From Heteronotia binoei (taxonomy: Eukaryota): a stretch of 64,000 nucleotides of DNA. Every line of letters starts with the position of its first letter. Positions within the stretch are counted from its first letter, which is position 1. The notes beneath the pieces were generated by a model. That model was not told where the DNA came from, searched no databases, and saw only the letters and a program-made list of their open reading frames with translations. Position numbers and translations under genes: made by a program. Below, piece by piece: positions 3,250 through 64,000 of this stretch. The stretch is from NCBI RefSeq assembly GCF_032191835.1, contig NC_083224.1, forward strand, positions 22,568,001 through 22,632,000. The letters run 5' to 3'.

Positions 3250-3960
3250 AGATAACCCCACCTTGGCCTGACCCAGGAGGGCCGATTCTCTGGTGGAACA
3301 ATGAATTGCATGGATTCCCCAGTGCAGGTCTAGCCCCCTCCTCCCATGGAGTTTCCCAGCCGTTACTCGGTGGAGGAGGAAGGATCGAATCCAGGCGAGG
3401 GGGCGACTGGGGGGAGCCACTTTTCCTGAGACTGGGGGCTGATCCAGCCTGCACCCCCGTGTGGAGTGACTCCCGAGCAGCCCCATTGAGCTGCATTGTA
3501 GGGCGCCGCTGACCGCAGCCGGGATTAATGAAGTCTAGTCCCGCGGGGGTGGGGGGGGGGAGAGGCAGGGAGCTTTTTCGGGGTACTGAAGCCGTGAAAG
3601 GGTTAAAAGAGCCGAGTTGTTTTCTAGAGAGGCCGACAAAGGGAGGGGGCGGAGAGAAGGAGGGGGGCTCGAGACACGGGAGAGGTGGGAAGGACCGCTC
3701 CCCGTCAGTCTTTTCGATCTCCGCAGAAAGAAATCCGGCTCTCGCCACGTGTTCGGGGGGCTTTTAAATCCTTTCCAAAGGTGAGGTTCTTCTCTGTCAG
3801 GATTTCCCTTTTTCAGACTGGGTGGTCCCGCCTGGGGTGGGGTGGGGGGGACCGGGGTCTGCAGGGCTTGCAAGGCGGCTCTTTCCCGGGCGGCCTCCGG
3901 GGGATCGGGACCCGCCAGGCAGCGGGGAGGTAAGGATGGAGGGGAGGGAGGGGGAGCAGG
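3250..3960 (+). promoter_or_regulatory. GC/CpG-rich promoter and putative non-coding first exon of gene A
   Basis: CpG-dense and conserved upstream of all four SCAN exons; candidate donors AAG|GTGAGG (3780|3781) and GAG|GTAAGG (3929|3930); E-box CACGTG in ctctcgccacgtg. Confidence 0.6.
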
Positions 3961-4349
3961 ATATAAATGGGACTGAATAAATACCTTCCATGGTGTCCCT
4001 TGCAGGGGCTTCCCCCTCTTATCTAATTCAAATGCTCCACCTCCTGCTTTCCTTCCAGTAATTTCCTGTAGTTTCCCCCTGCTCTGTCCCTCTGTGTTAT
4101 CAGCAAGAAGCTCCTTCTCTGCGGGGCCCCTGTTATCTTGGATTCACACCCTTAGCCTGTCTGGTTTTAACAGTTTAGCAGAAGCTCCTCTGAGGGGCCT
4201 CTTAACAGTCACTCTAAATGTTGCATCAGACATTCTCTTTTGAAGGCACAACCATATTTTCCATCATTATTATTATTGAGGTATTCATTAATTATTCAGG
4301 GGTCCCTCTTCAGTATTTTATTTATTTGCATTAATTATAGAACAAACTT

Positions 4350-4680
4350 TTAAGTCTAGTGACATCCTTAAGACAAAACCATATTCAGGATGTAAGCTTT
4401 TGTGTGCAAGTACACTTCTTCAGAATAGCCCAGGTTTTTGCATTGTGTAAAAACGTAAATATCAGTCTGTACCTCCGTAAATTTCTTCGTAAGACTGATG
4501 GAGTCCCATTCCATGCGGCTTGATGTGGTGCCTTCCATGAAGATACATTCAGGTGGGTAGTCATGCTTGCACATGAAAGCATATTCCTTGAATAAAACTT
4601 TTCTGGTCTTTAAGATGCCACTGGACTCAACTGGTCTGCCGCTTCAGACCAACAGGACTGTCCACCTGAATCTACATCAA
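4350..4680. mobile_element. Penelope-derived inverted pLTR remnant in intron 1 (shared by all four paralogs)
   Basis: Head-to-head pLTR ends (gtaagcttttgtgtgcaagtacacttcttcag and catgaaagcatattccttgaataaaac); homologs at ~18960-19260, ~35900-36230 and ~58980-59490. Confidence 0.6.
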
Positions 4681-5093
4681 TTGTAGTCTGCCATCTAATG
4701 GTTAAGCCCTTACCACACCTTTGTCCTGGGCTCCCGTTTACCTTCAGATGTACCCACTAGAGAGACTGATCCCCAGAAACTGGAAGCCAACTCCTCAACA
4801 TATTTTTTTAAAAGCAAATATTGTTGTATTTGTTGCTTCAAACTTGCATATCTTTTAAAACATTATCTGTGATATAGCACAGGGACATTAATCCTGATCC
4901 ACAAACTACAACAAGGATGCTCTTTCTGATCCACAGGGGTAATCCTTAGGTGTTTCTTCACCAGGATCTATGATGTAACTTTGTTATCTTTTTCTTCTTG
5001 CCTTTCTGATATCTTTCCCTCTCCCTCTTCACAGCTTAGTGAATAAGAGTGTCTCTCCAGAGTCAGAGGCAACCCAAGCTAAAGGGAAAGGAG

Positions 5094-5516
5094 ATGAAAG
5101 AGAAGGATCCCGAGTGCCCTGGAACTGGCAAGGCATCAAGGAAAGGTCCCCATCCCATCCAAGCAGGGAGTGGTGCTGAAGTTTTGGAAGGAGCTGTACC
5201 AGAGATCTTCATTGAGGACACTGTGACCACAAATGTAAGCAGCCGATGTTTCCGGCAGTTCTGTTACCACGAGGCAGATGGGCCCCGAGAGGTTTGCAGA
5301 CAACTCTATGGACTTTGTAAGGAATGGCTGGAGCCAGAGAAGCGCACCAAAAAGGAGATAGTGGACCTGGTGATCCTGGAGCAGTTCCTGGCCATCCTGC
5401 CCCAGGAAGTGCAGGGCTGGGTGAGAGGATGCGGGCCAGAGACCAGTTCCCAGGCAGTGGCCCTGGCCGAAGGTTTCCTCCTGAGTCAGGCAGAGGAAAA
5501 GAGACAGGCACAGCAG
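5094..5516 (+). CDS. Gene A SCAN-domain exon
   Basis: [21 protein letters not shown]...[33 protein letters not shown] is a SCAN domain; acceptor ttcacag| near 5034; donor CAG|GTGAG. Confidence 0.93.
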
Positions 5517-5540
5517 GTGAGGTGCTTTCTTGCAGACTGA

Positions 5541-7022: not shown

Positions 7023-7137
7023 ATGTGGGGAGAATCCATGAAGGTGGAAGCGAAGTTCTCTATGGCAGAAGGAGCTCCATCAGAGGAAGGTCAGAGGGCG
7101 CAGGCCCAAGAGCATGGCCAAGATGCCCTGTCAAGTG
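7023..7137 (+). CDS. Gene A linker exon (115 nt)
   Basis: tttcag|ATGTGG...AAGTG|gtaagg; MWGESMKVEAKF...ALSSG; conserved in B, C and D. Confidence 0.8.
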
Positions 7138-8126: not shown

Positions 8127-8197
8127 GCAATGAAGAGATGTTGTCGAATTATTTCCTTTGCAGAGAAGTGGGAATAGTTGCTCAACCTCTGGTCCAG
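8127..8197 (+). CDS. Gene A linker exon (71 nt)
   Basis: ttgtag|GCAATG...GTCCAG|gtaggg; same length in B and C. Confidence 0.8.
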
Positions 8198-8379: not shown

Positions 8380-8506
8380 TCTCCATTTTCCTTTGGGGAT
8401 TTGGCTGTGTATTTCACTTTGGCAGAGTGGGCCTTGCTGGATCTGGGCCAAAAAGCACTCTACAGGGAAGTCATGCTGGAGAACTATGGGAATGTGGCTT
8501 TTCTGG
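8380..8506 (+). CDS. Gene A KRAB-A exon (127 nt)
   Basis: [43 protein letters not shown]; canonical 127-nt KRAB-A exon; not in the supplied ORF track. Confidence 0.92.
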
Positions 8507-11797: not shown

Positions 11798-11923
11798 CAG
11801 CAAATGTAGAGGAGACAGCTGGGGAATTCCAGGGGTTTTCTTTGGAAGTAGTTAAGAATGAAGATGCTGAAAAAAACTCTAGAGATGAAGATGGATCACA
11901 GAGGCAGGAGGAAAGCCATGCTG
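11798..11923 (+). CDS. Gene A acidic cassette exon (126 nt, phase 1-1)
   Basis: tttattccag|CAGCAAAT...CATGCTG|gtaaga; AANVEETAGEFQGF...EESHA; in frame between the KRAB and ZF exons. Confidence 0.6.
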
Positions 11924-12409: not shown

Positions 12410-14547
12410 CAGGGGATGATCAGAGGAATAAGGAACTGCATCATCTATTGCCTGATGAGGTCAAGAAAGTAGATGTGAGCAGAAACGTCAGGATTCAAAG
12501 CAGGCTGAAGAGGCAGAAAGACAGTCAAAGGGTGAAGAATAGAAATAAATCCATTCATTGCCAGAGAGTAGATTTCCAAGAAGAAATTCACATGTTGGAG
12601 GAAACATACAAGTGCTTCGAGTGTGGAATGAATTTCTCAGATCAAACCCAATATACTGTCCATTTGGGAATGCACAGTGGAAAGAAGATCCATCAATGCC
12701 TGGAGTGTGAAAAGGCCACAATTACCAGAGCAGAGTTCCTTCGACATCTAAGATCACATACAGGAGAGGAACCTTCTAGCTGCTCAGACTGTGGTAAGAG
12801 CTTCTCAGAGAAATCAGACCTTGTTCAACACCAAAGAATTCATTCTACAAGAGAGAAGTGTTTAATCTACTCCAAGAGTGGAGTGATATTCTTGGATGGA
12901 AAAGAGGGTAATATGCATTTTTCAAAGCACAGGATAATGAATGCATGTCATTGCTTTCAATGTGGAAAGTACTTCAGATACAAATCACAGTTCCTTGTAC
13001 ACCAAAGGATCCACAGAGCAGGGAAACCTTTTGAATGCTCAGAGTGTGGCAAGACGTTCAGTCAGAGTAGCCAGCTTCAAAGTCATCTCAGAACCCACAC
13101 AGGGGAGAAGCCTTTTGAATGCTCAGAGTGTGAAAAGAGATTCAGGGATAGTAGCAGTCTTCAAAAACATCTAAGAATCCATACAGGGGAGAAGCCTTTT
13201 GAATGTTCAGAGTGTGGCAAGAGATTCAATCAGAGTGGCCAGCTTCAAAGTCATCTCAGAACCCACACAGGGGATAAGCCTTTTGAATGCTCAGAATGTG
13301 GGAAGCGATTCAGTCACAGTGGCCAGCTTAAAAGTCATCTCAGAACCCACACAGGGGAGAAGCCTTTTGAATGCTCACAGTGTGAGAAGAGATTCAGGGA
13401 TAGTAGCAGTCTTCAAAAACATCTAAGAATCCATACTGGGGAAAAGCCTTTTGAATGCACAGAGTGTGGAAAGACATTCAGTCAGAGTGCCAGTCTTCAA
13501 AGTCATCTCAGAACCCACACAGGGGAGAAGCCTTTTGAATGCTCAGAATGTGGGAAGAGATTCAGTCGGAGTGGCCATCTTCAAAGTCATCGAAGAACCC
13601 ACACAGGGGAGAAGCCTTTTGAATGCTCAGAGTGTGGAAAGAGATTCAGTCAGAGTGACTGCCTTCAACAGCATCAAAGAACCCACACAGGGGAGAAGCC
13701 TTTTGAATGTTCAGATTGTGGAAAGAGATTCAGTCACAGTGGCCATCTTCAAAGTCATCTCAGAACCCACACAGGGGAGAAGCCTTTTGAATGCTCAAAG
13801 TGTGGGAAGAGATTCAGTCACAGTGGCCATCTACAAAACCATTTCAGAGCTCACACAGGGGAGAAGCCTTTTGAATGCTCAGAGTGTAGGAAGAAATTCA
13901 GTTACAGTGGGACTCTTCAAAGTCATCTCAGAACCCACACAGGGGAGAAGCATTTTGAATGCTCAGAATGTGGGAAGAGATTCAGTCATAGTAACAGTCT
14001 TCAACAGCATCAAAGAACCCACACAGAGGAGAAGCATTTTGAATGCTCAGAATGTGGGAAGAGATTCAGTCACAGTGGCCATCTTCAACAGCATCAAAGA
14101 ACCCACACAGGGGAGAAGCCTTTTGAATGCTCAGAATGTGGGAAGAGATTTAGTCACAGTGGCCATCTTCAAAGTCATCTGAGAACCCACACAGGGGAGA
14201 AGCCTTTTGAATGCTCAGAGTGTGGAAAGAGATTCAGTCAGAGTGGCCATCTTCGAAGTCATCTCAGAATCCACACAGGGGAGAAGCCTTTTGAATGCTC
14301 AGAGTGTGGGAAGAGATTCAGTCAGAGAGCCAATCTTCAACTGCATCAAAGAATCCACACAGGGGAGAAGCCGGTTGAGTGCTCAGAGTGTGGGAAGAGA
14401 TTCAGTCACAGTGGCCATCTTCAAAGCCATCTCAGAATCCATACAGGAGAGAAGCCTTTTGAATGCTCAGAGTGTAGGAGGAGATTCAGTCATAGTAGCA
14501 GTCTTCAAAAGCATCAAAGAACCCACACAGAGGAGAAGTTTATTTAA
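12410..14547 (+). CDS. Gene A C2H2 zinc-finger exon
   Basis: (ct)n ttattccag| acceptor; 4 N-terminal fingers plus 18 tandem fingers with TGEKPF-type linkers; TAA at 14545-14547. Confidence 0.95.
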
Positions 14548-17869: not shown

Positions 17870-18660
17870 CTGGAGGAGATGAAACCCACCATGTCCTGAC
17901 CCAGGAGGACCGATTCTCGGGTGAAACAATGAATTGCAGGATTCCCCAGTCCAGGTCTAGCCCCCACCCCCCTCCAACGGAGTTTCCCAGCCGTTACTCG
18001 GGGGAGGAGGAAGGATGGAGGCCAGGCGAGGGAGGGACTGGGGGGAGCCACTTGCTCAGCCGCATTTGCCTGAGACTGGGGGCTGATCCAGCTTGGGGTT
18101 CCCCCCTCCCCCGTGCGGAGTGACTCCCGAGCAGCCCCATTGAGCTGCATTGTAGGGCGCCGCTGACTGCAGCCGGGATGAATGAAGCCCAGTCCCGCGG
18201 GGGGGGGGGGGGCAGGGAGCTTTTCTCGGAGCTTTTTCTGCAATCTTGAAAGGGTTAAAACAACCGAGCTGTTGGCTAGAGAGGCCGAGAAAGGGAGAGG
18301 GCGGAAGTTGGAAAGAAGACAGGGGAGGGGCTCCAAACACGGAAGAGCGCGGGAAGGTCCCTTCCCAGTCAGTCTTTTCGGTCCCCGCAGAGAGGAATTC
18401 GGCTCCCGCTTCGTCTTCGGGGCAGGGGCCCTTTTAAATCCTTTCCAAAGGTGACGTTCTTCTCTGTGGAGGTTTCCCTCTCTCAGCCCCCGGGGGAGGG
18501 TGGCGTCCGGAGGCGCCTGCCGGCGGTGGGGTGTCTTCAGGGCTTGCAAGGTGGCTGTTTCCCGGGCGGCCTCCGGGGGATCTGGACCCGCCAGGCAGCG
18601 GGTAGGTGAGGGGGGAAGCAGACCAGCATCATCCCTGCATCCCGCCTCCTGGAGGATGTG
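17870..18660 (+). promoter_or_regulatory. GC/CpG-rich promoter and putative first exon of gene B
   Basis: Homologous to 3250-3960; candidate donor AAG|GTGACG at 18450|18451. Confidence 0.6.
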
Positions 18661-20008
18661 AAGGTTTTATCCGAGATGCATTGCTAATTGTTTTATGTTT
18701 GTGACGTTTCTTGTAGTTTTTGTACTGTTTTATCAGGTGCATTTTCTCTACCGAAAGTCACCTTGAGTGCCATTCCGGGGAGAGGGAGCGGGATATCCCT
18801 GCATAAATAGCCACGGTGGGCAGGGTGATCATAATGGGAGGAATCATTCGTGCCGATGGCCTTCCGGAAATAGCAGGCATTTGAGCCAGTGCTCCCCCCT
18901 ATGATGATGGGGGGGGGGGGGCGCGTCTTTTATTTATTTGCTTTAATTATCGAACAAAATTTAAGTCAACCACTACCTTTAAGACAAAGTTTTATTTAAG
19001 CTTTTGTGTGCAAGCGCACTTCAGACTAGTCCAGGTTTTTGCATTTTGTAAGTAAGGAAATATCAGTCTCGACCTGTGCAAGTTTCTTCGTAAGGTTGAT
19101 GGAATTTCATTCCATACAGCTTAATGCCCTTCATGAAGATAGATTCAGGTGGGTAGCTGTGCTTGCACATGAATTTCATGCCCTGATTTTTCAGTCATAA
19201 AAGTGCTGCTGGACTCAAACTTTGTTCAAATCAACTCATCTGTCCACCTGGCTCTACCTTAATTATAGTCTGCCATTTAATGGGACACAATGCAATCAAT
19301 AGGATGGTACTTCCAGTAAACTATGAAATAGAATTTGGGTTGCAGAAATCTGGAAAACAGGATTGAAGGAAAGCATAACTGTTAACATGACCCAATAAAT
19401 AATGCAAAATTACATAGTAAGATACAAATTATAGCAAACTATACCTGGGAATATAGATTCCAATCCCCAATAATTCATCCAAGTAACTTTGTGAATTCAT
19501 TTGTACAGTGCTACCCTATTACCTGGGTAGAGAAGTCCTCTTCAATAATTAAGTCTTGCTTAGTTTGGGGAAAGGCAAACACATCAGCTTGGTCTAGTAG
19601 TTAAGGAGTGGTGGACTCTTAACGGTTAAGCCCTTACCCGTCTCTTTGTCCTGGGCTCCAGTTTACCTTGAGATCTTCCTACTAATAAATCGGAAGCCAA
19701 GCTTATAACACCTCCAACAGATTTTTTTTTTAAAGTAAATACTGGTGGTTTTGTTGCCTGGAAGATCAAACAGGCATATTTTAAAAAGTTTGATATGAAA
19801 TATACCACGGTTATATTAATCCTCATCAACAAACTAGAAAGATACCCTTTCTGATTCACTAGGGTAATCCTTTTGTGATTCTTCACCAGGGTCAGTGATG
19901 TAACTCTTTCTTTTCTTCCTGCCCTTTTGGTATCCTTCCCTCACCCTCTTCACAGCCAAGTGAATAAGAGTGTCTTTCCAGAGTCAGAGACAACCCAAGA
20001 GGAAGGAG

Positions 20009-20431
20009 ATGGAAGAGAAGGACGCTGAGGGCTCTGGAACTGGCAAGGCATCAAGGAAAGGTCCCCATCCCATCCCAGCAGGGAGTGGTGCTGAATTTTG
20101 GGCAAAAACTGTGCCAGAGATCTTGGCTCAGGACACTACGACCGCAGATGTACGCAGCCGATGCTTCCGGCAGTTCTGTTACCAGGAGGCTGATGGGCCC
20201 CGAGAGGTTTGCAGCCAGCTCCATGGACTTTGTAAGGATTGGCTGGAGCCAGAGAGGCACACCAAGAAGGAGATCATGGACCTGGTGATCCTGGAGCAAT
20301 TCCTGGCCATCCTGCCTCAGGAAATGCAGGGCTGGGTGAGAGGATGCGGGCCAGAGACTAGTTGCCAGGCAGTGGTCTTGGCTGAAGGTTTCCTCCTGAG
20401 TCAGGCAGAGGAGAAGAGGCAGCCACAGCAG
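20009..20431 (+). CDS. Gene B SCAN-domain exon
   Basis: SCAN motif; ATG at 20009; donor CAG|GTGAG; 423 coding nt as in A. Confidence 0.93.
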
Positions 20432-42474: not shown

Positions 42475-42545
42475 GCAGTGAAGAGATGTTATCAAGCTGT
42501 TTTCTTTGCAGAGAAGTGGAAATGCCTCCTAAACCTCTGGTCCAG
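42475..42545 (+). CDS. Gene C linker exon (71 nt)
   Basis: ctgcag|GCAGTG...GTCCAG|gtaggg. Confidence 0.8.
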
Positions 42546-51539: not shown

Positions 51540-52166
51540 AAAAAGGGAGCGTAATCTATCTAACCTTGACTAATCCTCCCTCCCAATTGAGTTTCCCAGT
51601 CCTAATAGACTAGGAGGAGGAGGAAGGATGGAGGCCAGGCGAGGAAGGGACTGGGGGGAGCCACTTGCTCGGCCTCCTTTGCCTGAGACTGGAGGCTGAT
51701 CCAGCCTGGGGTTCCCCCCGCCCCGTCCGGAGCGACTCCCGAGCAGCCCCATTAAACTGCATTGTAGGGCGTCTCTGACTGCAGTCGGGATGAATGAAGC
51801 CCAGTCCCGCGGTGTGTGAGGGGGTCTTTAAGGGGAGGGGCGGGAGCTTTTCTCGTGGCTTTTTCTGCAGCCGTGAAAAGGTTAACGTAGCCGAGCTGTT
51901 TGCTAGAAAGGCCGAGCAAGGGAGGGGGCGGAAGGGGAAAAGAGGACTGGGAGAGGCTGGGGGGTGGGCTTCAGACATGCAAAAGGCCGGGAAGGTTCCC
52001 TCCCCAGTAAATCCTTTCGGTCTCCGGAGACGCAAATTCGGCTCTCGCCACGTTTTGAAACCGTCTTTTAAAACGTGATGCTCTTCTATGTAGGTGTTTC
52101 CTTTTGCCAGCTTGCCCGCCTTTAGGGGGGGGTGGGATCTGCAGGGCTTGCGAGGCGGCTCTTTCT
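51540..52166 (+). promoter_or_regulatory. GC-rich promoter block of gene D, interrupted by L1
   Basis: Homologous to the A, B and C promoters up to aggcggctctttct; resumes at 58867. Confidence 0.6.
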
Positions 52167-52405: not shown

Positions 52406-55400
52406 TTACATCAAATTAATAATGTCATAATATCTACCAGGTATACATGTACGCATCTGATCTACAGGACCAAAAGAAAATTTAAGAAATGGAAGCCACT
52501 TGTACATCAGAGATTCGTTACTTTCTGAATTGTTTATATTGCATAAACTATCTGCTATCTTGTCCATCGCATAGACCTCCCAGATTTTAGCATACCAGGC
52601 TTTAACTGGAGGAATATTGGGAGATTTCCAAAATTGGGCTAACACCATTTTAGCAGCAGCTAGTAAAAGGGATATCAGGGATTTATTGAGAGAAGTAATA
52701 GAAATATCTTTCCAACAGTCAAGCAAAATGAGTTCCAATCTTAAGGGTAAACTATAGCCCGTGATATCCTTGATTTTTGCCACAATTACTGCCCAAAACG
52801 CCTGCACCCTCGGGCAAGACCACCAGCAGTGTGTAAATGTGCCCACCTCTCCGCAATTTTTCCAACATTTGGAGGATTGATTTATCGCCATATGGCTTAA
52901 TCTCTGAGGTGTTAAATACCACCGAAACAAAATTTTTTGAGTTTGTAATTGTATATTCAATTATTTTGAAACATACGAAGGAGATGACCAGATTTGTTGC
53001 CAAACATCCTCCTGAAAATTAATTGAACTATTCCTTTGCCAAATTTCTTGATAGGATAACAAATCAACAGCATCAGTGTCTAGCAAACCCTTATAAATAA
53101 ATGAAATCAGTCCCTTCCGCTTTAAAAAAGGAGAATATAGCAAGTGTTCAAAGAAAGTGAGAGGTCGATTGAAATTGTATTTCTTTAAGAGTGATGTCAC
53201 CAAGTTGTTAGTTTGCAAGTATTCAAACCATGGGATTTTTGTCCCACCAGTTTTCTCTTCCAAAGATTTTTTGTCGAGCATTTTTCCATTGGACAAAATA
53301 TCCACAAACCTAGAAAGGTTATATTTTTTCCAAATTGGAAAAGACTTGTAAAAAAACCCCGGTTGAAACCAAGAAACATCCACAAAATGAGATAGTGGAG
53401 ATATTGGAGGGGCTAAAGAGAGGCGACGTTTGTCCCAAATCTGAAAAATAGCTTTAAGAAAAAGGTTGGAGGAGATAATAGGAGGTCTATTCTTCGGAAA
53501 TTCCCATAATATAGAGTGAAACGATTTGTTATTTAGATAGGTATCTTCTAGGGCCTTCCAACCTGAATTTAAGTCAGCATCATGGTATCTAATAAGACCA
53601 CCTAAAATGGCAGCTTCATAAAATTTATGGAGATCCGGAAGAGCCAGACCCCCTGAGGATTTAGAACGAATAAGAGTTGCATACCCTATTCTAGACAAGC
53701 CCTTGTTCCAAATATATCTTAAGAACGAACGACGCCAACCCACAAATAAATCCTCAGGAATAAGAATAGGAATGGCTCGAAATAAAAACAGAAATTTGGG
53801 GAAAATAAAAGATTTAATAATCTGAATTTTTTCATTCCAGGGAATGAGTGAAGAATTTTTATTCTTTTGCAGGGTAAGAATGTCCTTAATCAATAAATGA
53901 TGATTAACTTTAAAAATATCTCCCAATTTCAAAGGTATATTGATCCCCAAATATGTCCAATATCTATCAATTTTTTTAAAGTGATAATTAGAGTAAATGG
54001 AGTCTTGGAGAGCATCCGAAATTGTGATGGGGTAAAGAATGGTTTTGGATGGGTTTACTCGAAGGCCTGATATAGAAGAAAATACAGATAATAAATCAAA
54101 GACAGCCGGTAAAGAAGACTTAGGTTTTGTAACAAAAAGCACTAGGTCATCTGCAAACAAAGACACCTTAATTTGTTTCTTTCTAATAGGGATACCAGTG
54201 ATAATATTGGTATCACGGATAGCATTAGCAAGAGGTTCTATTGCAATCGCAAAAAGCAGAGGAGACAATGGGCAACCTTGCCTCGTCCCTCTGAAAAGAT
54301 TAAATTCTTCAGAATCCAAATTATTAATAGAAAGAATAGCAGAAGGCGATTTATATAAAGAATGGATTATCTTCAGAAAATTCGGGCCAAAGTTCATTTT
54401 CTGCAGTAAGGTTGTAAGATAAGGAACTTCCACGGAATCAAAGGCTTTTTCAAAATCAATAGACAAGATAAAAGAAGACTCAATATTAAATTTCCGGCAG
54501 TATTGAATAACATCAAGGACCATTCTAGTATTGTCCGTTAACTCACGGTGTGGGATAAAGCCCGATTGGTCAGGATGAATGCAGTTCCCTATAAAGGTAT
54601 TAAGCCTAGCCACCAGAGCTGCTGTAAAAATCTTATAATCACAATTAAGGAGCGATATCGGCCTGTATGAACTAGGGTCTAGTAAGTCTTTGTCCTTCTT
54701 TGGAAGAAGTATGATTTTTGCCTGTGACCAAGTAACAGGGAAAGAACCAGACTGTACAAACTGATTACAGGCGTCTGCCAAGATGGGAGCCAACAAAATG
54801 TTAAAAAATTTATAAAATTCTGGTATAAAGCCATCTCGGCCTGGAGATTTATTGGATTTCATAGACTTGATAGTCTCCTGTATTTCAAGTGCAGTAAAAG
54901 GTTTGTCCAAAAAGGATTTAACCTCAGGAGAAACAGGCTTAATAACTGAGTGAGTGTCTAAGAAAGATGAAATAAGGTCTGCTGATGGATGCTGGGAGGA
55001 ATATAGAGATGAATAGTACTTTTTAAACACTCCTACAATATCCTTAGTGGAATGTTTCAAGGTACCAGTTTTAGAACGAATGGAAGAAATAGCCATTGAG
55101 GATACTCTCTTTTTAACCTTCCATGATAGGAGTTTAAGAGATTGAGGAGTTCGAAACCAATATTTTTGTTTTATAAAAGCCATTTGTTTTTGAATCTTGG
55201 AGACGTCAAGAGATTCTAATTTTTTTCTTTCTATAAGAAGTTTTGAATAAGTTTTTTTGCTACCAAATTTTTTAAATTTCTCTTCCAATTTGGTAATGTT
55301 AGCAACCAAATCAGATCTAATTTTTTCTTTTTCTTTTTTATACGAAGAGGCAATAGCCATAAATCTGCCACGAATTACAGCTTTAAAAGAATCCCAAACT

Positions 55401-56287
55401 ATATGCTGGGGTACTCCACACTCCATATTGAATTGAAAAAATTCTTTAATGTCTTTTTCAATGGAATCTGTAACCGATTTCATAGACAGAAGTTTACTAT
55501 CCAATCTCCAATTAAAAGAAAAAGATCTGTCAGTAACGCCTGACATATACCCTTCCAACCATGCATGATCAGACCAAATCATTGGGCCAATTTCTACTTT
55601 AGAAAAAAGATTAGAAATAGAATCTGAAACTAAAAGAAAATCTATTCTGGAATAAGTTTGATGACGAGAAGAAAAAAAGGTATAATCTCTTTCATTTGGA
55701 TGTCTGCTTCTCCAAATGTCTGACAGATTATAGGATTGAAAAACTTGAGCTAAATCATTTTGGCCATTCAAATCTTTTGATTGAGACCTTTTATTGGCAG
55801 ATATAGGTAGCAGGCTTTTTTGAGATCTATCTAAAGAAGGATTAACAACATAGTTGAGATCTCCTCCCAAGATAATGGGCCCTGTATGAAAGGTTTGAAG
55901 TTGTGACAACGTATCTTTAATAAATGCGATTTGCCCATCATTTGGAGCATACACCGATGCCAGAGTATAAGGGCTACCATTAAAGACCCCATTGATAAAA
56001 ATATACCGACCCCTAGGGTCAATTGAGGAATTTTCAAAAGTGAATTGGACTGATTTACCTATTAGGATGGCCACACCTCTTGCTTTGGAAGACCCATAAG
56101 CTTGAAATTGATGAGCAAAAAATTTGGACTGGAAGACCCTGGGCTGGTTACCCTTAAGGTGAGTTTCTTGCAAAAAAATTATATCTGGTTTCTGACGAGA
56201 GATGGCAGAGGCAACCCGTTTTTTCTTAATTAAATTATTTAGCCCGTTACAGTTTAGAGAAAGAAATTTCAAGTGGCACTCTGCCAT
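52406..56287 (-). pseudogene. L1 ORF2p (APE endonuclease, RT, CCHC); 1293 codons with one in-frame TAA at 52961-52963
   Basis: NCNGL, LQETH, GGDLN, SRIDF, SDH (EN); IDFEKAFDSV, RQGCPLSP, FADD (RT); CWKNC...HCWWSC. The two track ORFs (1108 aa and 184 aa) are contiguous in one frame: TCA AAA TAA TTG AAT. Confidence 0.92.
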
Positions 56288-57744
56288 AATTGAAAGAGGA
56301 AAAAACCAAGGTTATCAAAATTATTACAATTTATAGCATTTAACCCAGGTGCCACCAGGATAGCTCGAGATGAATCCTGTAGATCAAATTTCAAAGGTAT
56401 GAGGACAGATTTCAAATCAAAGGCTTTAAAAAACTTCCAGCTAAAACCATAATAATTCAATACAGTTATGCTGCCCATAACAAAAACAAAAAACCATAAC
56501 CAACACCAGTGGTCTAGCATTAACAGACACTAGCCACTAACTCACCCTCCAACTCTGTTAACCCAAACTTGGGAAAACAACAACTACTTACTTAAAAGGT
56601 TAAATTTGAAGCGGAAGTCTTCCTTGCTGAAGACACCGCACAACTAGCAACAACTACCAAATGGAGCTATTTAAAAAAAACCGAAGTTCTCCATTCTCCC
56701 TCTCTGCCAAAAATGCTTATATTTAACAATATCAACCCAGCAAAATTAAAATTTATAAACAAAATAACAGAGCCGAATGTATAGAGAGTTTTATAATGAA
56801 AGGCCACACAAAGCTGATTGAATCAAGGCTAAAATGCCTAGAAAGCTACATATAATAAAATCTGTGCCTTTTATCAACTCAGATTAGTGAATTAAAGATA
56901 AGTACAGGCAAACTAATATACCATGTGTAACAGCATCGGATCTCGATCACAAAGTTATAGTGAGACTTAAGACACTATGATAAAAATACAATGAAACTTT
57001 AAACAGAATTGTGAACACTATTAAATACTGATCTCCCCAAACACTCCCCACCAACTATCCTTCAGCCTCTTATAAGCCTATGTAGGGAGATGTGATAGTA
57101 AGGGAAACAAATTTCCAAACCCTCATAATATCATACGGCACAAACTGACACACACATACATTCCCTACCAACCCTCTGTCTCACACACTCATTTCCATTC
57201 AAGAATTCACAAAGGAAGGGAAAAGGACCTGACACTTCATTAACTCACAGTAGAAAGAAATATATTGATATAAAGCCCTGATCATACTATTCAAGTTTCT
57301 CACTCAGATCTACCCCCCCCCTCTCACTCTCTCTCACTCTCTCACTCACTCCCACACCCTCTCTCGTCACCCAGCCTCCCCATTCAAACACCTACTTCCA
57401 CTTACTTTTTAAACCATATATTCCAAGTCACTCCACTCTTCCAATCATGCATACCCAATCAACCAAGAAGATTTCCTTTAATGAGTTGATTTAAATTAAT
57501 AACTCCCTCACATTCATAACATTGCTTTCAAAAAAATATAAATAACAAGGGGGGAAAAAAAGGGGGGGGAACCCCCCAATTTCATATATAAACACTGCTT
57601 CATAAGCACCACGTAGGCAAAGCTTATAAGTCAGCAGTTCGGTAGGCAAAGCTTATATGTCAGGGGGAAAAGGACGCCAGGAATCCTCAACAAAAAAAAA
57701 AAAAAGGGGGGGGGGAGATTTCTGCATAGCAACAGTTCCAGCAT

Positions 57745-58740
57745 TTAGCTTCTAGAAGAAACAGGCCGATCAGGACGGTTCAAAGGCACACGACGCCATC
57801 TAGTATCTGAAGTTATTGAATGAACATGTGTGGCTGCTTCCAGAAGGCCGGTGGGAACAGGAAGATTCATATCGCGGAGCATGCATAGGCCTGAGTCGAG
57901 ATCTGCAGCTACAAATGACTGATCCTGCACTGTAACTTGCAGCTTGTACGAAGCAACCCATCGATATCTGATGTTTTCCCTGTTCAGGATTTCTATAATT
58001 GGCTTCAAATTTTTCCGCCTTTGCAAGGTTTCAGAAGACAAATCCTGTAGAATTTGGACGTTGTAATCTCCTAGCAGAAGAGGATTTATAGCCCGGGCTT
58101 TTTGCAGCAACTTGGATTTCACTGAGGCAGAAGAGAAACGGACTAAAATGTCCCTAGGCAACGAAGTTTTCTGTCTGCGCAATGGGCCAATTCTATATAC
58201 TGTTTCCAGGGCACAGAGATCAGAGTCAGAAAAACCCAATGCCTTCGATAACCAGGAGACTATAAGAGTTTTTAAATCAGAGGGGGAGGCAGAATTCTCG
58301 GGGAGCCCACGAATTTTAACATTCCCCAATTTCAGTTGGTTCTCAAGTGCAATAATTTTATCAGTGGCCCATTCATCTCTTTTATAAAAATACTGAGAGT
58401 CCTCCTGCACAGCACTTGCCATGTTAAAAGCAGAATCTGCCGTCTCTGCCACCTTCTCTAAGGACGTTTTGAAACCCTCCAATTGAGCAGAAAGGGGCTG
58501 GATCATGGCAGATATTTTGTCAGTCATATTTTGTTCCAGTTTTTGAAAAGCCTCCATTACCTCAGAACGAAATGAAGCTAGGTCTGCTGCTGTGTTTTCC
58601 CCTCCTTCCGACGCCATCTTGCTTGCAGGGCTGCTTGCTTTTCCTGAGGCCTTAGCCTTAGGCTTTTTTGGAAAATAGTCTTTAACAGAGTTCCTTGAAT
58701 TTCTTTTTGATCTGGGCTTTTGACCATCTACTGTTCCCAT
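57745..58740 (-). CDS. L1 ORF1p (RNA-binding/coiled-coil), 331 aa from the first ATG
   Basis: Coiled-coil N-terminus; NVKIRGLPE, VYRIG, PRDILVRF, ILQDLSSETLQRR motifs of L1 ORF1; open. Confidence 0.88.
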   Translation of the reverse strand: MGTVDGQKPRSKRNSRNSVKDYFPKKPKAKASGKASSPASKMASEGGENTAADLASFRSEVMEAFQKLEQNMTDKISAMIQPLSAQLEGFKTSLEKVAETADSAFNMASAVQEDSQYFYKRDEWATDKIIALENQLKLGNVKIRGLPENSASPSDLKTLIVSWLSKALGFSDSDLCALETVYRIGPLRRQKTSLPRDILVRFSSASVKSKLLQKARAINPLLLGDYNVQILQDLSSETLQRRKNLKPIIEILNRENIRYRWVASYKLQVTVQDQSFVAADLDSGLCMLRDMNLPVPTGLLEAATHVHSITSDTRWRRVPLNRPDRPVSSRS

Positions 58741-59135
58741 ACTAATTAAAGAAAAAAAAGAAAACAAACAACAACGCTGGGCGCTTGCTTAAGTGGATTT
58801 GGCAGGGGTAAGTAAGGAGCTCTGCTTTCAGGCGTCCATTCCCTATGCGTGCGACGCCACGCCCCCAGGCGGCTCTTTCTAAGGCGGCCTCTGCTTGAGC
58901 CAGTGCTCTCCCCATGATGGGGGCGTTTGGGGATGGGGGGGGGTGTTTTATTTATTTGCTTTAATTATTGAACAAAGTCTAGGTCAAGCAATACCTTTAA
59001 GACATACAAAGTTTTATTTAAGCTTTTGTGTGCAAGCGCACTTCAGACTAGTCCAGGTTTTTGCATTTTATAAGAAAGGAAATATCAGTCTGTACCTGTG
59101 CAAGTGTCTTCATAAGGTTGATGGAGTTCCAATAC

Positions 59136-60269: not shown

Positions 60270-60692
60270 ATGGAAGAGAAGGACCCTGAAGGCCTTGGAA
60301 CTGGCAAGGCATCAAGGAAAGGTCTTCATCCCTTCCAAGCAGGGAGTGGTGCTGAATTCTGGGAAACAGCTGTGCCAGAGATTGTGGTTCAGGACACTGT
60401 GACCGCAGATGTACGTAGCCGATACTTTCGGCAGTTCTGTTACCATGAGGCAGATGGGCCCCGAGATGTTTGCAGCTGGCTCCACGGACTTTGTAAGGAC
60501 TGGCTAGAGCCAGAGAGGCGCACCAAGAAGGAGATTGTGGACCTGGTGATCCTGGAGCAGTTCCTGGCCATCCTGCCCCAGGAAGTGCAGGGCTGGGTGA
60601 GAGGATGCGGGCCAGAGACCAGTTCCCAGGCAGTGGCCCTGGCTGAAGGTTTCCTCCTGAGTCAGGCAGAGGAGAAGAGACAGGCACAGCAG
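60270..60692 (+). CDS. Gene D SCAN-domain exon
   Basis: SCAN motif; acceptor at 60211|60212; 423 coding nt; donor CAG|GTGAG. Confidence 0.9.
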
Positions 60693-61166: not shown

Positions 61167-61217
61167 TTCATTCATATGACGTTTCCTGTGCAATCACAGT
61201 TCTTCAGATACAATGAA
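61167..61217 (-). ncRNA. Minimal type I hammerhead ribozyme motif in a Penelope pLTR remnant
   Basis: Minus strand: uucauuguau-CUGAAGA-A-cugug(auug)cacag-GAAA-CG-UC-auaugaaugaa; core, stem II, palindromic ACGU stem III and GUC triplet are all present. Confidence 0.6.
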
Positions 61218-62129
61218 ATGGAAGAAAACCATCCAAAGGTACACACATGGCTGAAAAGCAAATCAGCATAACATGATGAAGATTTTCAGACAAAACAGGA
61301 ACAACAAGCCAAGCATACAGAGTCAACAGCTGTATGGATCCAGTTAAGGGGCAACAATTGTTGAACCAATAAGTATGTCAAAATAGGAGATAAGAGTGGT
61401 AGAGAATCTTTCCTAATAGTGGTGAAATTACGGTAACTGAGATTCCGCAGGGCCAGTGCCTGGGTTTTTGTTTCCTAGGTGAGCTGCCCACTAGCGCCCC
61501 CCCAAAGAAATTTTAAAAACAGAGAATTGTAAAAGAAATGAAGAAACTTGAAAAGATTTACATTTTTAATTTACAGTTTATTATTTTAAATTTTAATTTT
61601 TAAAAAAAGAATTGTGAGATTAAGCAATAAAAATTGTGAGAATACTACTTGATTCTTTTAGCTGGAGGTGCCAGGGACAAGACCTTCACATGACCATTTC
61701 GACTTGATCCTTTTAGTTGGAGGTGCCAGGGACAAGACCTTGTGCATGCGAGAAAGGTGCTCTACCACTGAGCTATAGCTCCCTCCCAATGGCTATGATA
61801 AGTAGAGTAGGAGGGATGAGTGGCGGCATACAACTTCAACAGGAACTAATTTTTAGAAACTGCAGTTGGCTCTTCTTTAGCTTTTACAATTAGTTAATTT
61901 ACCCCTGCTGGGCTCGAAGGAGCGCCCTGCAAACGCACTGTCTGCTTTTGCATTTCCCGGGTCTGTAACAGACCTAGGGAACGCAAAACTGGCCGGGCAG
62001 CATCTGCGTTCCATGGAGCCTACTTTCCATTGGGGAAGACAAGCTCCAAGGAGCACACGCACCGTGCATGGGGAGAGGGGGTGCCCTAGGCGGCTGTCTA
62101 CATGCCCTACTCCCACACACTGGCCATGC

Positions 62130-63240
62130 TCAAGCGTGAAGGTAACAAACAGCATTTTGTTCTTTTAGTTGGGCTGGGGTGTGCAGTATATTTCAAGTTT
62201 CATTGCATTGGTTTTGAAGCCAAGGAATAGAAAATCTTGACCAATTTCAGTTTCTCTATAACCTTAAATTTCTGTAATTCTCCACTAGTCATTATTTTTA
62301 TCATCCTGATGTTCAGCTGTAATCTTCCTTTGGCACTTTCTGATTTAGCCTTCATTAGTAGTTATTTCAAGTCTTCGCTACTTTCTGCTAGTAATGTGAT
62401 GTCATTGCATATGTCAGATTGTAAATGTTCCTTCCTACTGTTTTCACTCCACCGTCATCTAAATGTAACCCAGCTTTCCGTATGCAGTGTTCTACATATA
62501 GATTGAAGAGACAGGGAGATAAAATGCATCCTAGTCTGGCAAACTTCCCAATTGGAAACCATTCTGTTTCTCCATATTCTAACAGTGGCTTCTTGCCCAG
62601 AGTGCAGGTTGTACATCAAAACAATCAGATGTTGTGGCACACCCATTACTTTAAGCACCAACCATACCTTTTCTTCATCCCAACAGTCAAAAGCATTGAT
62701 GTAATCTATAAATCACAAGCTGGTTATCTTTTGAAATTCTCTCCTATGCTCCATTAACCAACTTAAATGTGCACTATGATCTCAAATGCGTCTTCCTTTT
62801 GTGAATTCAGCTGGAACATCTGACATTTCTGTTTCGATATATGATAACAGTCCTTGTTGTGAAATGCTAAGCATCACTTTACTTGAATGAGGAATTAATG
62901 CAGCGGTCCGACAGCTACTACAGTCTTTGACGTCTCCCTTTTGTGGAATTGGAAAGTAAAGTGTTTCCAGGTTGTGGGCCATTGTTTTGTTTCCCTCTTT
63001 CATAGCAGATTCTTCTTAAGAGTTTGATAGGATTCCTTTTCTGTGGTTCTGATACCCCATCTACTCGCGGTGATTTCTTTCTCCCAATTGTACTCAGTGC
63101 AGCTTTACTTTCTAAAACTCTTCCTTCTTGTTCAGAAGATTATACTTGAAAGAAATCTGTCCTCCTTTCATCTCTTATTTATATTCCTTCAGTATATTGT
63201 TCCTATCTTTCCTTAGATATTTCTACCTCTAGATAGGTCA
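62130..63240 (-). mobile_element. RTE-BovB fragment in intron 2 of gene D
   Basis: Colinear with 21890-22620 and 6050-6830. Confidence 0.75.
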
Positions 63241-63395
63241 CTAGGCTGGGAAGAAAACCCAGCTCTGGTTCTTGCCCTGTGGTTATAGCAGCTCTGATGG
63301 AGGAGTCAGTGATGAGGAGTCTGGGAGAGGGTCAGGATCCATCTCTCTCCCGGTTCCATTCCTTCTCTTATCCCTCTCCCTTTCTGTTGTTGCAG

Positions 63396-63510
63396 ATGTG
63401 GGGAGGATCCATGAAGGTGGAAGTGAAGTTCTCTGAGGCAGAAGGAGCTCCATCAGAGGCAGGTCAGAGGGCACAGGCCCAGGAGCATGCCCAAGAGACC
63501 CTGTCAAGTG
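63396..63510 (+). CDS. Gene D linker exon (115 nt); gene continues beyond the window
   Basis: ttgcag|ATGTGG...AAGTG|gtaagg. Confidence 0.78.
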
Positions 63511-64000
63511 GTAAGGGGGCCTCCTGCCCAGAGGGGATTGGGGCACTTGTTAGGCATAAGGTTCAGGACAGGAGAAAAGGGAGATACTTCTGAAGACTAT
63601 GTAGAATAGAGTTTTGGGAAATAGTGCCATATGATGTCATGGTGGCCACTCCACTTTAAGGGGAAGTATACAAATTCACAGAGAGCAATTCTGTTCTTAT
63701 TTATATCAATGGAAATATACATATCTCGCTATCCTTCCATTAGAAAGACTCCTTCCTTCCATTGGAAGGACTCAACGTGGCTCAAAAAAAAAAGGAAGAC
63801 AAATCTGGGTGCAGCTGTGAGCCAAGGTGAATAAATGGAACCTCCATGTTCTCCTGACCAGCATGGCCCAGACTTAACCAAGGTCATCATATCTCAGAAG
63901 CTAAGAACGTGGAAGCAAAGTGCTCTGAGGCAGAAGGAGCTCCGTCAGAGGAAGGTCAGAGGGCGCAGGCCTAGCAGCGTGCCGAAGATGCCCTGTCAAG

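What the first reader, a model, noticed from the sequence alone, without database searches (positions are those of the whole stretch)
3250..64000. Squamate SCAN-KRAB-ZF tandem array: conserved effector domains, divergent DNA-contact codes, homogenised finger backbones
Seen: four ~15-17-kb units with very similar SCAN, linker and KRAB exons. Within each array the 84-bp finger units are nearly identical (gaatgctcagagtgtgggaagagattcagt...acccacacaggggagaagcctttt) except at helix positions -1/2/3/6: A uses HGHS/QGQS/DSSK, B uses SGSE/FSSK/WDSK, C uses YGNH/QGHK/RDYW. Intact finger counts are 22, ~20 and 9. Established: mammalian KRAB-ZFPs recruit TRIM28/KAP1 to silence TEs, and PRDM9 arrays show this minisatellite-like concerted evolution. 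Inference: this is a lineage-specific, fast-turnover specificity generator, possibly targeting the many local TE families. I cannot tell whether the locus is already annotated.
Basis: partly seen in the sequence, partly recalled or inferred. Interest (0 to 1): 0.72.

Follow-up and report, generated by a model that had tools for sequence, protein, structure and literature searches.

The report
Gecko SCAN-KRAB zinc-finger gene cluster
The window holds four tandem copies of a gecko-type SCAN-KRAB zinc-finger gene whose DNA-reading residues have diverged much faster than the rest of the protein; this is a real but ordinary example of how this large, well-known family of DNA-binding repressors evolves.

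Summary
There are four head-to-tail units, each with one CpG island. Each has an intact 141-codon SCAN exon, two linker exons and a KRAB-A exon, all with canonical splice sites. Three 84-bp C2H2 finger arrays lie in the window, with 22, 20 and 9 intact fingers and the quoted contact codes; unit D's array is off-window.

Contact positions -1/2/3/6 change 3-10 times faster than the backbone. Their dN/dS is about 1-3, against 0.2-0.5 for the backbone. SCAN (omega 0.12-0.25) and KRAB-A are under purifying selection.

"Nearly identical, homogenised backbones" is overstated:
- Backbones differ by about 10-14% for any pair of fingers, within an array, between arrays, or between this genome and Heteronotia binoei.
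- What array-specific similarity exists comes from local finger-block duplication, notably an 8-9-finger block in gene B that is >99.7% identical.

This is birth-and-death evolution, not PRDM9-like concerted evolution.

The closest proteins are annotated SCAN-KRAB-ZNFs of geckos; none reaches 90% identity. Anolis is already known to have about 240 such genes.

RNA contigs (90-95% alike) show that the family is spliced as modelled, but not that these copies are expressed. TRIM28 recruitment and TE targeting remain inference. Other notes of this scan report further genes of this family about 105 kb before and 53 kb beyond the window.

Verdict: new member of a known kind, modest interest.

The parts
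3451..3950 (+). Gene A CpG-island-like promoter region
   Evidence: GC 0.63, CpG o/e 0.69. One of exactly four such stretches in the window, one per unit. Homologous to 17860-18611.
5094..5516 (+). Gene A SCAN exon (ATG to GT donor, 141 codons, phase 0)
   Evidence: Pfam SCAN E 1.3e-35. Boundaries. 80% identical to H. binoei P0004.
7023..7137 (+). Gene A linker exon 1 (115 nt)
   Evidence: tblastn with P0004. AG/GT sites conserved in A-D. RNA contig on 7020-7113.
8127..8197 (+). Gene A linker exon 2 (71 nt)
8380..8506 (+). Gene A KRAB-A exon (127 nt, ends in phase 1)
   Evidence: Pfam KRAB E 4e-21. Donor at 8506 used in RNA joints.
11798..11923 (+). Gene A acidic cassette exon (126 nt, frame-preserving), a partial duplicate of the ZF exon's 5' end
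   Evidence: RNA joints 8506->11798 with GT..AG in two runs. Sequence and donor. The homologous exon is annotated twice in H. binoei P0107. No Pfam domain.
12413..14547 (+). Gene A zinc-finger exon: leader, 4 atypical leader fingers, 18 canonical tandem fingers (13030-14541), stop at 14545-14547
   Evidence: ORF, fingers, acceptor, Pfam zf-C2H2.
18151..18800 (+). Gene B CpG-island-like promoter region
20009..20431 (+). Gene B SCAN exon
   Evidence: Pfam SCAN E 7.7e-36..
25505..25619 (+). Gene B linker exon 1
26562..26632 (+). Gene B linker exon 2
26836..26962 (+). Gene B KRAB-A exon
   Evidence: Pfam KRAB E 3.9e-22. Best solved relative is ZNF93 KRAB, 7z36, E 1.2e-9.
29518..31628 (+). Gene B zinc-finger exon: 20 intact fingers, 2 degenerate, last finger cut by the stop. 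Fingers B02-B09 (29889-30560) are repeated as B10-B18 (30645-31400), with one extra chimeric finger, B14.
   Evidence: The duplicated blocks match at 335/336 and 335/336 nt.
34901..35200 (+). Gene C CpG-island-like promoter region
37304..37726 (+). Gene C SCAN exon
   Evidence: Pfam SCAN E 5e-37..
41428..41530 (+). Gene C linker exon 1 (12-nt in-frame deletion)
42475..42545 (+). Gene C linker exon 2
42752..42878 (+). Gene C KRAB-A exon
   Evidence: Pfam KRAB E 2.6e-20.
45261..46207 (+). Gene C zinc-finger exon: 9 intact fingers, and a stop inside the tenth
   Evidence: Backbone pN/pS is 0.47, against 0.33-0.35 in A and B.
51751..52150 (+). Gene D CpG-island-like promoter region
   Evidence: Homologous to 3337-3653 and 17967-18332.
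52961..58767 (-). L1-type LINE inserted between gene D's CpG island and its SCAN exon (ORF2 52961-56287, ORF1-like 57745-58767). Not part of the gene; it explains the longer C-D spacing.
   Evidence: ORFs. Endonuclease and RT domains.
60270..60692 (+). Gene D SCAN exon
   Evidence: Pfam SCAN E 2e-33..
63396..63510 (+). Gene D linker exon 1. The rest of gene D lies beyond the window end.

Best explanation
The window is part of a larger tandem cluster of paralogous SCAN-KRAB-C2H2 zinc-finger genes of a gecko subfamily that is also present in Heteronotia binoei.

Gene structure (shown). Each gene has a CpG-island promoter, a SCAN exon, two linker exons, a KRAB-A exon, an optional acidic cassette exon, and one large exon. 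That large exon encodes a short leader, a few conserved atypical fingers, and a variable run of canonical 28-residue fingers.

Mode of evolution (shown). The cluster evolves by birth-and-death:
- Whole units duplicate; the units differ at dS about 0.2.
- Fingers and finger blocks duplicate or are lost inside arrays by unequal exchange.
- Stop codons shift at the array tail.
- The four DNA-contact positions accumulate amino-acid changes at or above the synonymous rate.
- The zinc-binding backbone, SCAN and KRAB-A stay under purifying selection.

Function (inferred from the domains, not shown here). The proteins are probably sequence-specific DNA binders. They probably homo- or heterodimerise through SCAN and repress transcription through a standard-looking KRAB-A box, probably via TRIM28/KAP1. 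Each paralogue would read a different long target. Transposable elements are a plausible but untested target class.
For: Domains and exon structure:
- Pfam SCAN, KRAB and zf-C2H2 hits.
- Canonical, phase-compatible splice sites in all copies.
- Exon-by-exon match to annotated H. binoei protein P0004.
- One CpG island per unit.

Unit duplication: self-alignment shows four units at 80-87% identity.

Constraint on effector domains: SCAN-domain omega is 0.12-0.25 and KRAB omega is 0.33-0.56.

Contact versus backbone:
- Pairwise pN is 0.49 at contact codons against 0.08 elsewhere.
- Tree-based counts give 6.3 nonsynonymous changes per site at contact codons, against 3.6 synonymous changes per site overall (Poisson P 3e-5), and 1.3 nonsynonymous changes per site at the remaining codons.
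- In positionally homologous fingers of three H. binoei tandem paralogues, contact omega is 1.2-1.3 and backbone omega is 0.32-0.50.

Intra-array duplication:
- B02-B09 and B10-B18 are >99.7% identical.
- The nearest-neighbour finger lies in the same array 79% of the time in A and 92% in B.

Fingerprint turnover:
- No collinear fingerprint is shared among A, B and C, or with gecko relatives.
- The leader fingers (DTQI/V, YSQV, ESDQ) are conserved across gecko genera.

KRAB-A type: it carries VMLENY, L20 and a hydrophobic residue at position 27. It matches the KAP1-bound ZNF93 KRAB (residue criteria from PMC8835667).

Transcription: spliced RNA contigs join KRAB to the cassette exon and the cassette exon to the ZF exon.

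Family context: Anolis has about 240 SCAN-KRAB ZNF models (PMC3971581).
Against: - No binding, repression or TRIM28 interaction data exist for these proteins.
- Human SCAN-KRAB proteins mostly carry variant KRABs that do not bind KAP1 (PMC6745500). Liu et al. doubted KAP1 binding for the Anolis KRAB consensus (PMC3971581).
- No KRAB-B box was found.
- The RNA contigs are only 90-95% alike. They therefore come from paralogues or a related species, and do not prove that A-D themselves are transcribed.
- Contact-site omega above 1 in the window is inflated, because positional homology between arrays is lost. The clean cross-paralogue estimate of 1.2-1.3 is not significantly above 1.
- Gene C has a short array, and gene D carries an L1 next to its promoter. 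Either could be on the way to decay.
Confidence: 0.85

Rival explanations
1. PRDM9-like minisatellite. Ongoing concerted evolution homogenises the finger backbones within each array, while diversifying selection keeps the contact codons different.
For: - B contains an almost perfect 8-9-finger block duplication.
- Nearest neighbours of A and B fingers are mostly in the same array.
- Within-array backbone distance is slightly lower than between-array distance (10.6% against 12.0%, permutation P<0.0002).
- Contact dN exceeds backbone dS.
Against: - Backbones differ by about 10-14% for any finger pair, including pairs from different species (12.7%). The shared backbone is therefore a family trait, not an array-specific product.
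- With B's duplicates removed, B-B distance (11.4%) equals A-B distance (11.3%), and C-C (13.7%) exceeds A-C (12.7%).
- In H. binoei tandem paralogues, fingers keep positional identity.
- There is no PR/SET domain.
Confidence: 0.12
2. One or more copies are decaying or non-functional duplicates, and the divergence of contact codes is simply relaxed constraint. The candidates are C, with a short array and a rearranged leader, and D, with an L1 beside its promoter.
For: - C has only 9 intact fingers, a stop inside the tenth, a replaced patch in its leader, and the highest backbone pN/pS (0.47).
- Contact omega in clean comparisons is about 1, which is what neutrality predicts.
- No RNA contig of 99% identity or more was shown on the exons.
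Against: - All SCAN, linker and KRAB exons are open, with intact splice sites.
- All retained fingers keep C2H2 ligands.
- Backbone omega is 0.33-0.47 in every array and SCAN omega is 0.12-0.25, which is well below 1.
Confidence: 0.2
3. The proteins act without TRIM28/KAP1. Like most human SCAN-KRAB proteins, they would work through SCAN-mediated partner networks or other cofactors, on host genes rather than on TEs.
For: - Human SCAN-KZFPs largely fail to bind KAP1 (PMC6745500).
- No KRAB-B box was seen.
- In gene A the first conserved motif reads DL instead of DV.
Against: - KRAB-A scores 72-78 bits against a 20.4-bit cut-off over the full model.
- It keeps VMLENY, L20 and a hydrophobic residue at position 27.
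- Its best solved match is the KAP1-bound ZNF93 KRAB (PMC8835667).
Confidence: 0.3
4. Gene B's doubled array is an assembly artefact: a collapsed or expanded tandem repeat rather than a true recent duplication.
For: The two blocks are >99.7% identical over about 670 nt, inside a repeat that is hard to assemble.
Against: - The copies differ at two positions and by an extra chimeric finger, B14.
- The reading frame is kept.
- The H. binoei relative P0004 shows a similar internal block repeat (QGNK-RAHQ-HGHK twice).
Confidence: 0.1

Closest known systems
Annotated gecko SCAN-KRAB-ZNF genes (Heteronotia binoei 'ZFP2-like' P0004, 'XlCOF6-like' P0107 and 'ZNF79-like' P0166 on CM063326.1; also Sphaerodactylus townsendi, Euleptes europaea, Paroedura picta, Eublepharis macularius, Gekko japonicus)
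   Same: - Same exon plan, with the same leader and atypical leader fingers.
- Same finger backbone.
- SCAN exon 80-87% identical.
- These proteins and A-D form one clade with 0.97 support.
- H. binoei also has tandem units at about 18-21 kb spacing.
   Different: - No near-identical protein. The best matches are 65% (A leader) and 75% (B leader).
- The tandem-finger contact codes are entirely different.
- DNA identity to the H. binoei loci is only 76-87%, no higher than between the window's own units, so 1:1 orthology could not be established.
Anolis carolinensis SCAN-KRAB-ZNF expansion (Liu et al. 2014, PMC3971581; Emerson and Thomas 2011 as cited there)
   Same: A large, lineage-specific reptilian expansion of SCAN- and KRAB-containing polydactyl ZNF genes, with no mammalian orthologues.
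   Different: The Anolis KRAB consensus was reported to lack the central leucine of the MLE motif. The KRAB-A boxes here keep VMLENY. This is a different squamate lineage (Gekkota).
Mammalian KRAB-ZFP clusters (e.g. human chr19, mouse clusters; PMC4592553, PMC5363842, PMC3126818)
   Same: - Tandem gene clusters.
- A single large finger exon.
- Gene and finger gain and loss.
- Accelerated change at DNA-contacting residues.
- A KRAB-A box of the 'standard' type.
   Different: - Here every copy also carries SCAN, and no KRAB-B was seen.
- In humans the SCAN-KRAB subset is old, conserved and mostly KAP1-independent (PMC6745500). Here it is the expanding, fast-changing subset.
- TE targeting and TRIM28 use are not shown.
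PRDM9 zinc-finger minisatellite
   Same: 84-bp finger repeat, rapid change at contact codons, and evidence of unequal exchange (the block duplication in B).
   Different: No PR/SET domain. Fingers are only about 86-90% identical at non-contact positions. There is no array-specific homogenisation beyond local duplications.

Membership tests
SCAN-domain zinc-finger proteins | N-terminal SCAN (leucine-rich dimerisation) domain, Pfam PF02023 | tested here: met
   All four units match positions 2-89 of the 90-position model, E 2e-33 to 5e-37, 114-126 bits against a 27-bit cut-off.
KRAB zinc-finger proteins (modern KRAB-A) | KRAB-A box matching PF01352, with the VMLE motif (A31-34), hydrophobic residues at A20 and A27, and D/E-V at A7-8 | tested here: met
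   72-78 bits against a 20.4-bit cut-off over positions 2-42 of 42. VMLENY, L20 and L27 are present in A-C. Positions A7-8 read EV in B and C and DL in A. Criteria from PMC8835667.
KRAB zinc-finger proteins (modern KRAB-A) | KRAB-B box following KRAB-A | tested here: inconclusive
   No exon with KRAB-B character was recognised. In the annotated H. binoei homologue, KRAB-A is followed directly by the cassette or ZF exon. The cassette exon has no Pfam hit. No dedicated KRAB-B profile was available.
KRAB zinc-finger proteins (modern KRAB-A) | Binds TRIM28/KAP1 and represses transcription | not testable with these tools
   Sequence resemblance only. The best solved match is the KAP1-bound ZNF93 KRAB (7z36, E 1.2e-9).
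Polydactyl C2H2 zinc-finger proteins | Tandem C-x2-C-x12-H-x3-H fingers joined by TGEKP-type linkers, encoded in one exon | tested here: met
   22, 20 and 9 intact fingers. Pfam zf-C2H2 and zf-H2C2_2 E 1e-53 to 1e-188. 84-bp period.
PRDM9-type zinc-finger minisatellite | PR/SET methyltransferase domain upstream of the array | tested here: not met
   The exons upstream of the arrays encode SCAN, linkers and KRAB-A only.
PRDM9-type zinc-finger minisatellite | Repeat units near-identical outside contact codons, through ongoing concerted evolution within the array | tested here: not met
   Mean backbone difference is 9.8-15.6% within arrays, 11-14% between arrays, and 12.7% between species.
PRDM9-type zinc-finger minisatellite | Positive selection at contact positions -1, 2, 3 and 6 | tested here: inconclusive
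   Contact omega is 0.9-1.4 against its own dS. It is 1.75-2.8 against all-site dS in the window, where positional homology is lost. It is 1.2-1.3 in positionally matched H. binoei paralogues. Contact omega is always 2-10 times the backbone value, but it is not shown to exceed 1 in the clean comparison.

The most novel reading that the evidence does not exclude
The gecko SCAN-KRAB cluster is a combinatorial recognition system. Neighbouring paralogues with wholly different finger codes would heterodimerise through their near-identical SCAN domains, so a few genes could read many composite targets. Block-duplicated arrays such as gene B's doubled 8-9-finger module would be selected to bind tandemly repeated DNA, such as a satellite or a TE with internal direct repeats of about 24-27 bp. 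In squamates the SCAN-KRAB subset, not plain KRAB-ZNFs, would then be the main fast-evolving TE-silencing arm and would use a standard TRIM28-binding KRAB, unlike the human SCAN-KRAB genes.
Probability: 0.1. Interest if true: 0.55.

Novelty: new member of a known kind. Interest (0 to 1): 0.3.

Why it matters
The locus is a clean, fully readable example of how a non-mammalian KZFP-type cluster changes. Gene duplication, finger-block duplication, stop-codon drift and contact-residue turnover can all be seen side by side.

It also carries a point of comparative interest. In this gecko subfamily the expanding, fast-changing genes are SCAN-KRAB genes with a standard-looking KRAB-A. In humans the SCAN-KRAB genes are the old, conserved, largely KAP1-independent minority.

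That makes these genes a reasonable substrate for testing whether TRIM28-dependent TE silencing by KZFPs operates in squamates. It does not change what is known about the family.

Tried and rejected
1. Array-wide concerted evolution was rejected. Backbone distances are the same within arrays, between arrays and between species.

2. One-to-one orthology with H. binoei could not be established.
- DNA of two H. binoei loci (L001, L002) matches all window units about equally, at 76-87%.
- The SCAN-block tree is star-like, with 46-77% support.
- The protein SCAN tree interleaves the two species with only 0.6-0.86 support.
- A true cross-species test of array invariance therefore could not be made. 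Exact look-up of P0107 found no contig.

3. Gene-specific expression could not be shown. The only runs found (3 runs, one study) hold contigs 90-95% alike on the exons, so they show family-level splicing only.

4. Gene C as a pseudogene was not supported. Its backbone pN/pS is 0.47 and all exons are open.

5. Rfam at gathering threshold found only one tRNA-like hit and nothing relevant to the genes.

6. The scan's own index for SCAN/KRAB words gave only two neighbouring notes.

A whole-protein homology search or fold was therefore left out.

8. No prediction of DNA targets from the finger codes was attempted, because recognition-code predictions for arrays of about 20 fingers are unreliable.

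Full report
**1. What is in the window**

A self-comparison shows four direct repeats of a gene-sized unit at 80-87% identity. Six-frame motif scans and Pfam place a SCAN domain in each unit, with E between 2e-33 and 5e-37. They place a KRAB-A box in units A-C, with E between 2.6e-20 and 3.9e-22. Unit D's KRAB and finger exon lie beyond the window end.

Tandem Repeats Finder reports three 84-bp arrays, at 13023-14583, 29859-31784 and 45577-46275, with 79-85% matches. These lie in long open frames of 757, 689 and 291 codons. The window has no N runs.

**2. Gene models**

The annotated Heteronotia binoei protein P0004 (743 aa; SCAN, KRAB and fingers) was used as a guide in a local tblastn. Paralogous stretches were then aligned. 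Every unit has the same exon plan, with canonical AG/GT sites and compatible phases:

- SCAN exon: 423 nt, from the ATG to a GT donor, phase 0.
- Linker exon 1: 115 nt (103 nt in C, through an in-frame 12-nt deletion).
- Linker exon 2: 71 nt.
- KRAB-A exon: 127 nt, ending in phase 1.
- A large finger exon whose first two bases complete that codon.

Gene A also has a 126-nt frame-preserving acidic cassette exon at 11798-11923. It is a partial duplicate of the 5' end of the finger exon.

Exactly four CpG-island-like stretches occur in the window, one upstream of each SCAN exon.

The C-D interval is longer because an L1-type LINE sits between D's CpG island and its SCAN exon. The LINE has endonuclease and RT domains.

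I checked frames exon by exon and did not build or search a joined protein.

**3. The fingers**

- Gene A has 22 C2H2 fingers. Four are atypical leader fingers and 18 are canonical.
- Gene B has 20 intact fingers, one with a lost cysteine, one with a lost histidine, and a last finger cut by the stop codon.
- Gene C has 9 intact fingers and a stop inside the tenth.

A keeps two leader fingers plus a degenerate stretch (12691-12945) that B and C lack. These are present in the H. binoei, Euleptes and Paroedura relatives, so B and C carry a deletion.

The three genes end their frames at different points of a homologous, decaying array tail.

**4. Selection on contact and backbone positions**

Pairwise Nei-Gojobori counts were made over 45 canonical fingers:

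| Site class | pN | dN/dS |
|---|---|---|
| Contact (-1, 2, 3, 6) | 0.49 | 0.9-1.4 with own dS; about 2-3 with backbone dS |
| All other codons | 0.08 | 0.27-0.30 |

A tree-based parsimony count gave the following:

- 64.5 nonsynonymous changes on 10.3 contact sites.
- 36.9 were expected at the overall synonymous rate (Poisson P 3e-5).
- 77.5 were seen at the other codons, against 210 expected.

These window estimates are upper bounds. A, B and C no longer show positional homology: none of the 7-17 matched finger pairs in each of the three comparisons has the same code.

A cleaner estimate comes from three younger tandem paralogues in H. binoei locus L002. Their fingerprints are still collinear, with 4-8 of 16 codes identical. 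There, contact dN/dS is 1.2-1.3 against all-site dS (0.6-1.0 against own dS), and the backbone value is 0.32-0.50.

So contact residues are clearly released from the constraint that holds the backbone. They evolve at or somewhat above the neutral rate.

SCAN is constrained. Domain omega is 0.12-0.25, at dS about 0.15-0.30 between paralogues. KRAB-A omega is 0.33-0.56 on few sites.

**5. Are the backbones homogenised?**

No, not in the PRDM9 sense.

- Mean backbone difference (72 nt) within arrays is 9.8% (A), 10.6% (B) and 15.6% (C). Between arrays it is 11-14%.
- After removing identical duplicates, the figures are 10.6% within and 12.0% between. This is significant by label permutation, but small. 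B-B then equals A-B, and C-C exceeds A-C.
- Adding four H. binoei arrays shows the same 12-14% between any two arrays, and 12.7% between species.
- In the H. binoei tandem paralogues, the nearest neighbour of a finger is almost always its positional homologue in the next gene. It lies in the same array only 3-29% of the time.
- In A and B the nearest neighbour lies in the same array 79% and 92% of the time.

The array-specific signal therefore comes from local duplication. In B, fingers B02-B05 and B06-B09 recur as B10-B13 and B15-B18 at 335/336 nt each, with a chimeric extra finger, B14. Of the two differences since that duplication, one is synonymous and one changes contact position +6 (K/R).

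The common backbone is a trait of the whole gecko subfamily. It is kept by purifying selection and shared ancestry.

**6. Relatives and annotation status**

Word-indexed searches used the leader parts of the A and B finger exons. They return gecko SCAN-KRAB-ZNF proteins as the only full-coverage relatives:

- H. binoei: 65% identity to the A leader (P0004) and 75% to the B leader (P0166).
- Sphaerodactylus townsendi: about 56%.
- Also Euleptes, Paroedura, Eublepharis and Gekko.

Nothing reaches 90%. The genome is therefore a gecko whose own proteins for this locus are not in that collection.

In a SCAN-exon tree, A-D form a 0.97-supported clade with H. binoei P0004 and P0107.

H. binoei chromosome CM063326.1 carries the same kind of cluster at 17.06-17.26 Mb. 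One locus (L002) has three tandem units at about 18-21 kb spacing. The other (L001) has a head-to-head pair.

DNA identity between these loci and the window is 76-87%, the same as between the window's own units. An 840-bp SCAN-block tree is star-like. I could not define 1:1 orthologues or date the duplications relative to the species split.

Across gecko genera the leader fingers (DTQI/V, YSQV/YSEV, ESDQ) are conserved. The tandem fingers share no collinear code.

**7. Expression**

One search found three RNA runs from a single study, each holding about 8% of the sampled words.

Laid on 7000-12999, their contigs cover linker exon 1, the KRAB exon, the cassette exon and the start of the finger exon.

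They include a joint from 8506 to 11798 with GT..AG ends in two runs, and less clean single-contig joints from the cassette exon or the KRAB exon into the finger exon.

The exonic contigs are only 90-95% alike. This shows that genes of this family are transcribed and spliced in the modelled way. It does not show that A-D themselves are expressed.

Very high depths at 7400-7799 and 9600-10999 are repeats.

**8. How it most likely works**

Shown:

- The domain architecture.
- Constraint on SCAN, KRAB and the finger scaffold.
- Fast turnover of contact residues and of finger number.

Inferred from the named families:

- SCAN mediates selective dimerisation (as cited in PMC6745500).
- A KRAB-A box with VMLE, L20 and a hydrophobic residue at position 27 is of the type that binds TRIM28 and represses (PMC8835667). 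Its best solved match is the ZNF93 KRAB from the KAP1 complex, 7z36.
- Long C2H2 arrays read long DNA targets.

Cautions:

- Human SCAN-KRAB proteins mostly do not bind KAP1 (PMC6745500).
- Liu et al. left KAP1 binding by lizard KRABs open (PMC3971581).
- No KRAB-B box was seen.
- TE targeting is the standard hypothesis for such clusters (PMC4592553) but is untested here.

**9. Novelty and verdict**

Large, lineage-specific SCAN-KRAB-ZNF expansions in squamates are published; Anolis has about 240 SCAN-KRAB models (PMC3971581). Accelerated change at DNA-contacting residues and dynamic gene and finger turnover are established for KZFP clusters (PMC3126818, PMC5363842). NCBI already annotates many members of this very subfamily in other geckos.

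This is a new member of a known kind. Other notes of this scan place further genes of this family about 105 kb before and about 53 kb after the window, so the window shows part of a larger cluster.

Noticed in passing
window 52961-58767 (-); L001 27399-28940: L1-type LINE with a 1108-codon ORF2 (endonuclease and RT domains) and a 340-codon ORF1-like frame without a Pfam hit. A 1550-nt stretch of ORF2 is 95.9% identical to an L1 copy in the H. binoei locus, while all other shared DNA is 76-87% identical. Either this L1 lineage is shared and young or slow-evolving, or the gene comparisons are all paralogous.
   Followed up: partly
window 24614-24686 (-), next to 23061-24308 (+): tRNA-Pro(GGG)-like sequence (Rfam tRNA 56.9 bits; ARAGORN) beside a 415-codon reverse-transcriptase fragment (RVT_1, E 1.4e-32). 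A 92%-identical copy of 24483-24691 occurs in H. binoei L002, so it is probably the head of a tRNA-derived SINE rather than a tRNA gene.
   Followed up: partly
window 27476-27721: A repeat of about 245 bp in gene B's KRAB-to-ZF intron. It is 86-95% identical to at least seven copies, in both orientations, in H. binoei L002. It is a SINE-like family that is much better conserved between the two genomes than the surrounding DNA.
   Followed up: no
window 7400-7799 and 9600-10999: Intronic stretches of gene A covered by thousands of RNA contigs at very high summed depth in all three runs. They behave as abundant transcribed repeats, not as exons.
   Followed up: no
window 45375-45420 (gene C leader): Gene C's pre-finger leader has two 12-nt gaps flanking a 22-nt patch. 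The patch encodes a helix-like FRHSSNLH segment resembling finger B03 (FTHSSNLH). It looks like an ectopic conversion from a finger unit into the leader, and it is in frame.
   Followed up: no
window 12691-12945: Gene A retains two extra leader fingers (codes TAER, ESDQ) and a degenerate stretch that B and C lack. The same segment is present in H. binoei P0004, Euleptes P0060 and Paroedura P0054, so B and C share or repeated a deletion.
   Followed up: partly
window 11798-11923; H. binoei P0107: The acidic cassette exon noted by another first-stage finding is used in related transcripts (KRAB-to-cassette joints with GT..AG). It is annotated twice in tandem in H. binoei P0107.
   Followed up: partly
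L002 10001-44860 (H. binoei CM063326.1): The public gene model for P0166 spans 35 kb and stitches parts of at least two neighbouring units: a linker exon, a finger array, then a second linker and cassette exon. It lacks SCAN and KRAB, so it is probably a chimeric annotation.
   Followed up: no
L002 3570-4998, 23849-25277, 45525-47121: Three H. binoei tandem paralogues keep collinear finger codes (4-8 of 16 identical). They give a natural time series of fingerprint decay that the window's older copies no longer show.
   Followed up: yes
window 61167-61217: Rfam at gathering thresholds reports no hammerhead or other ribozyme here or anywhere else in the window; the only hit is the tRNA-like sequence. 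The permissive E-value mode was not run.
   Followed up: no
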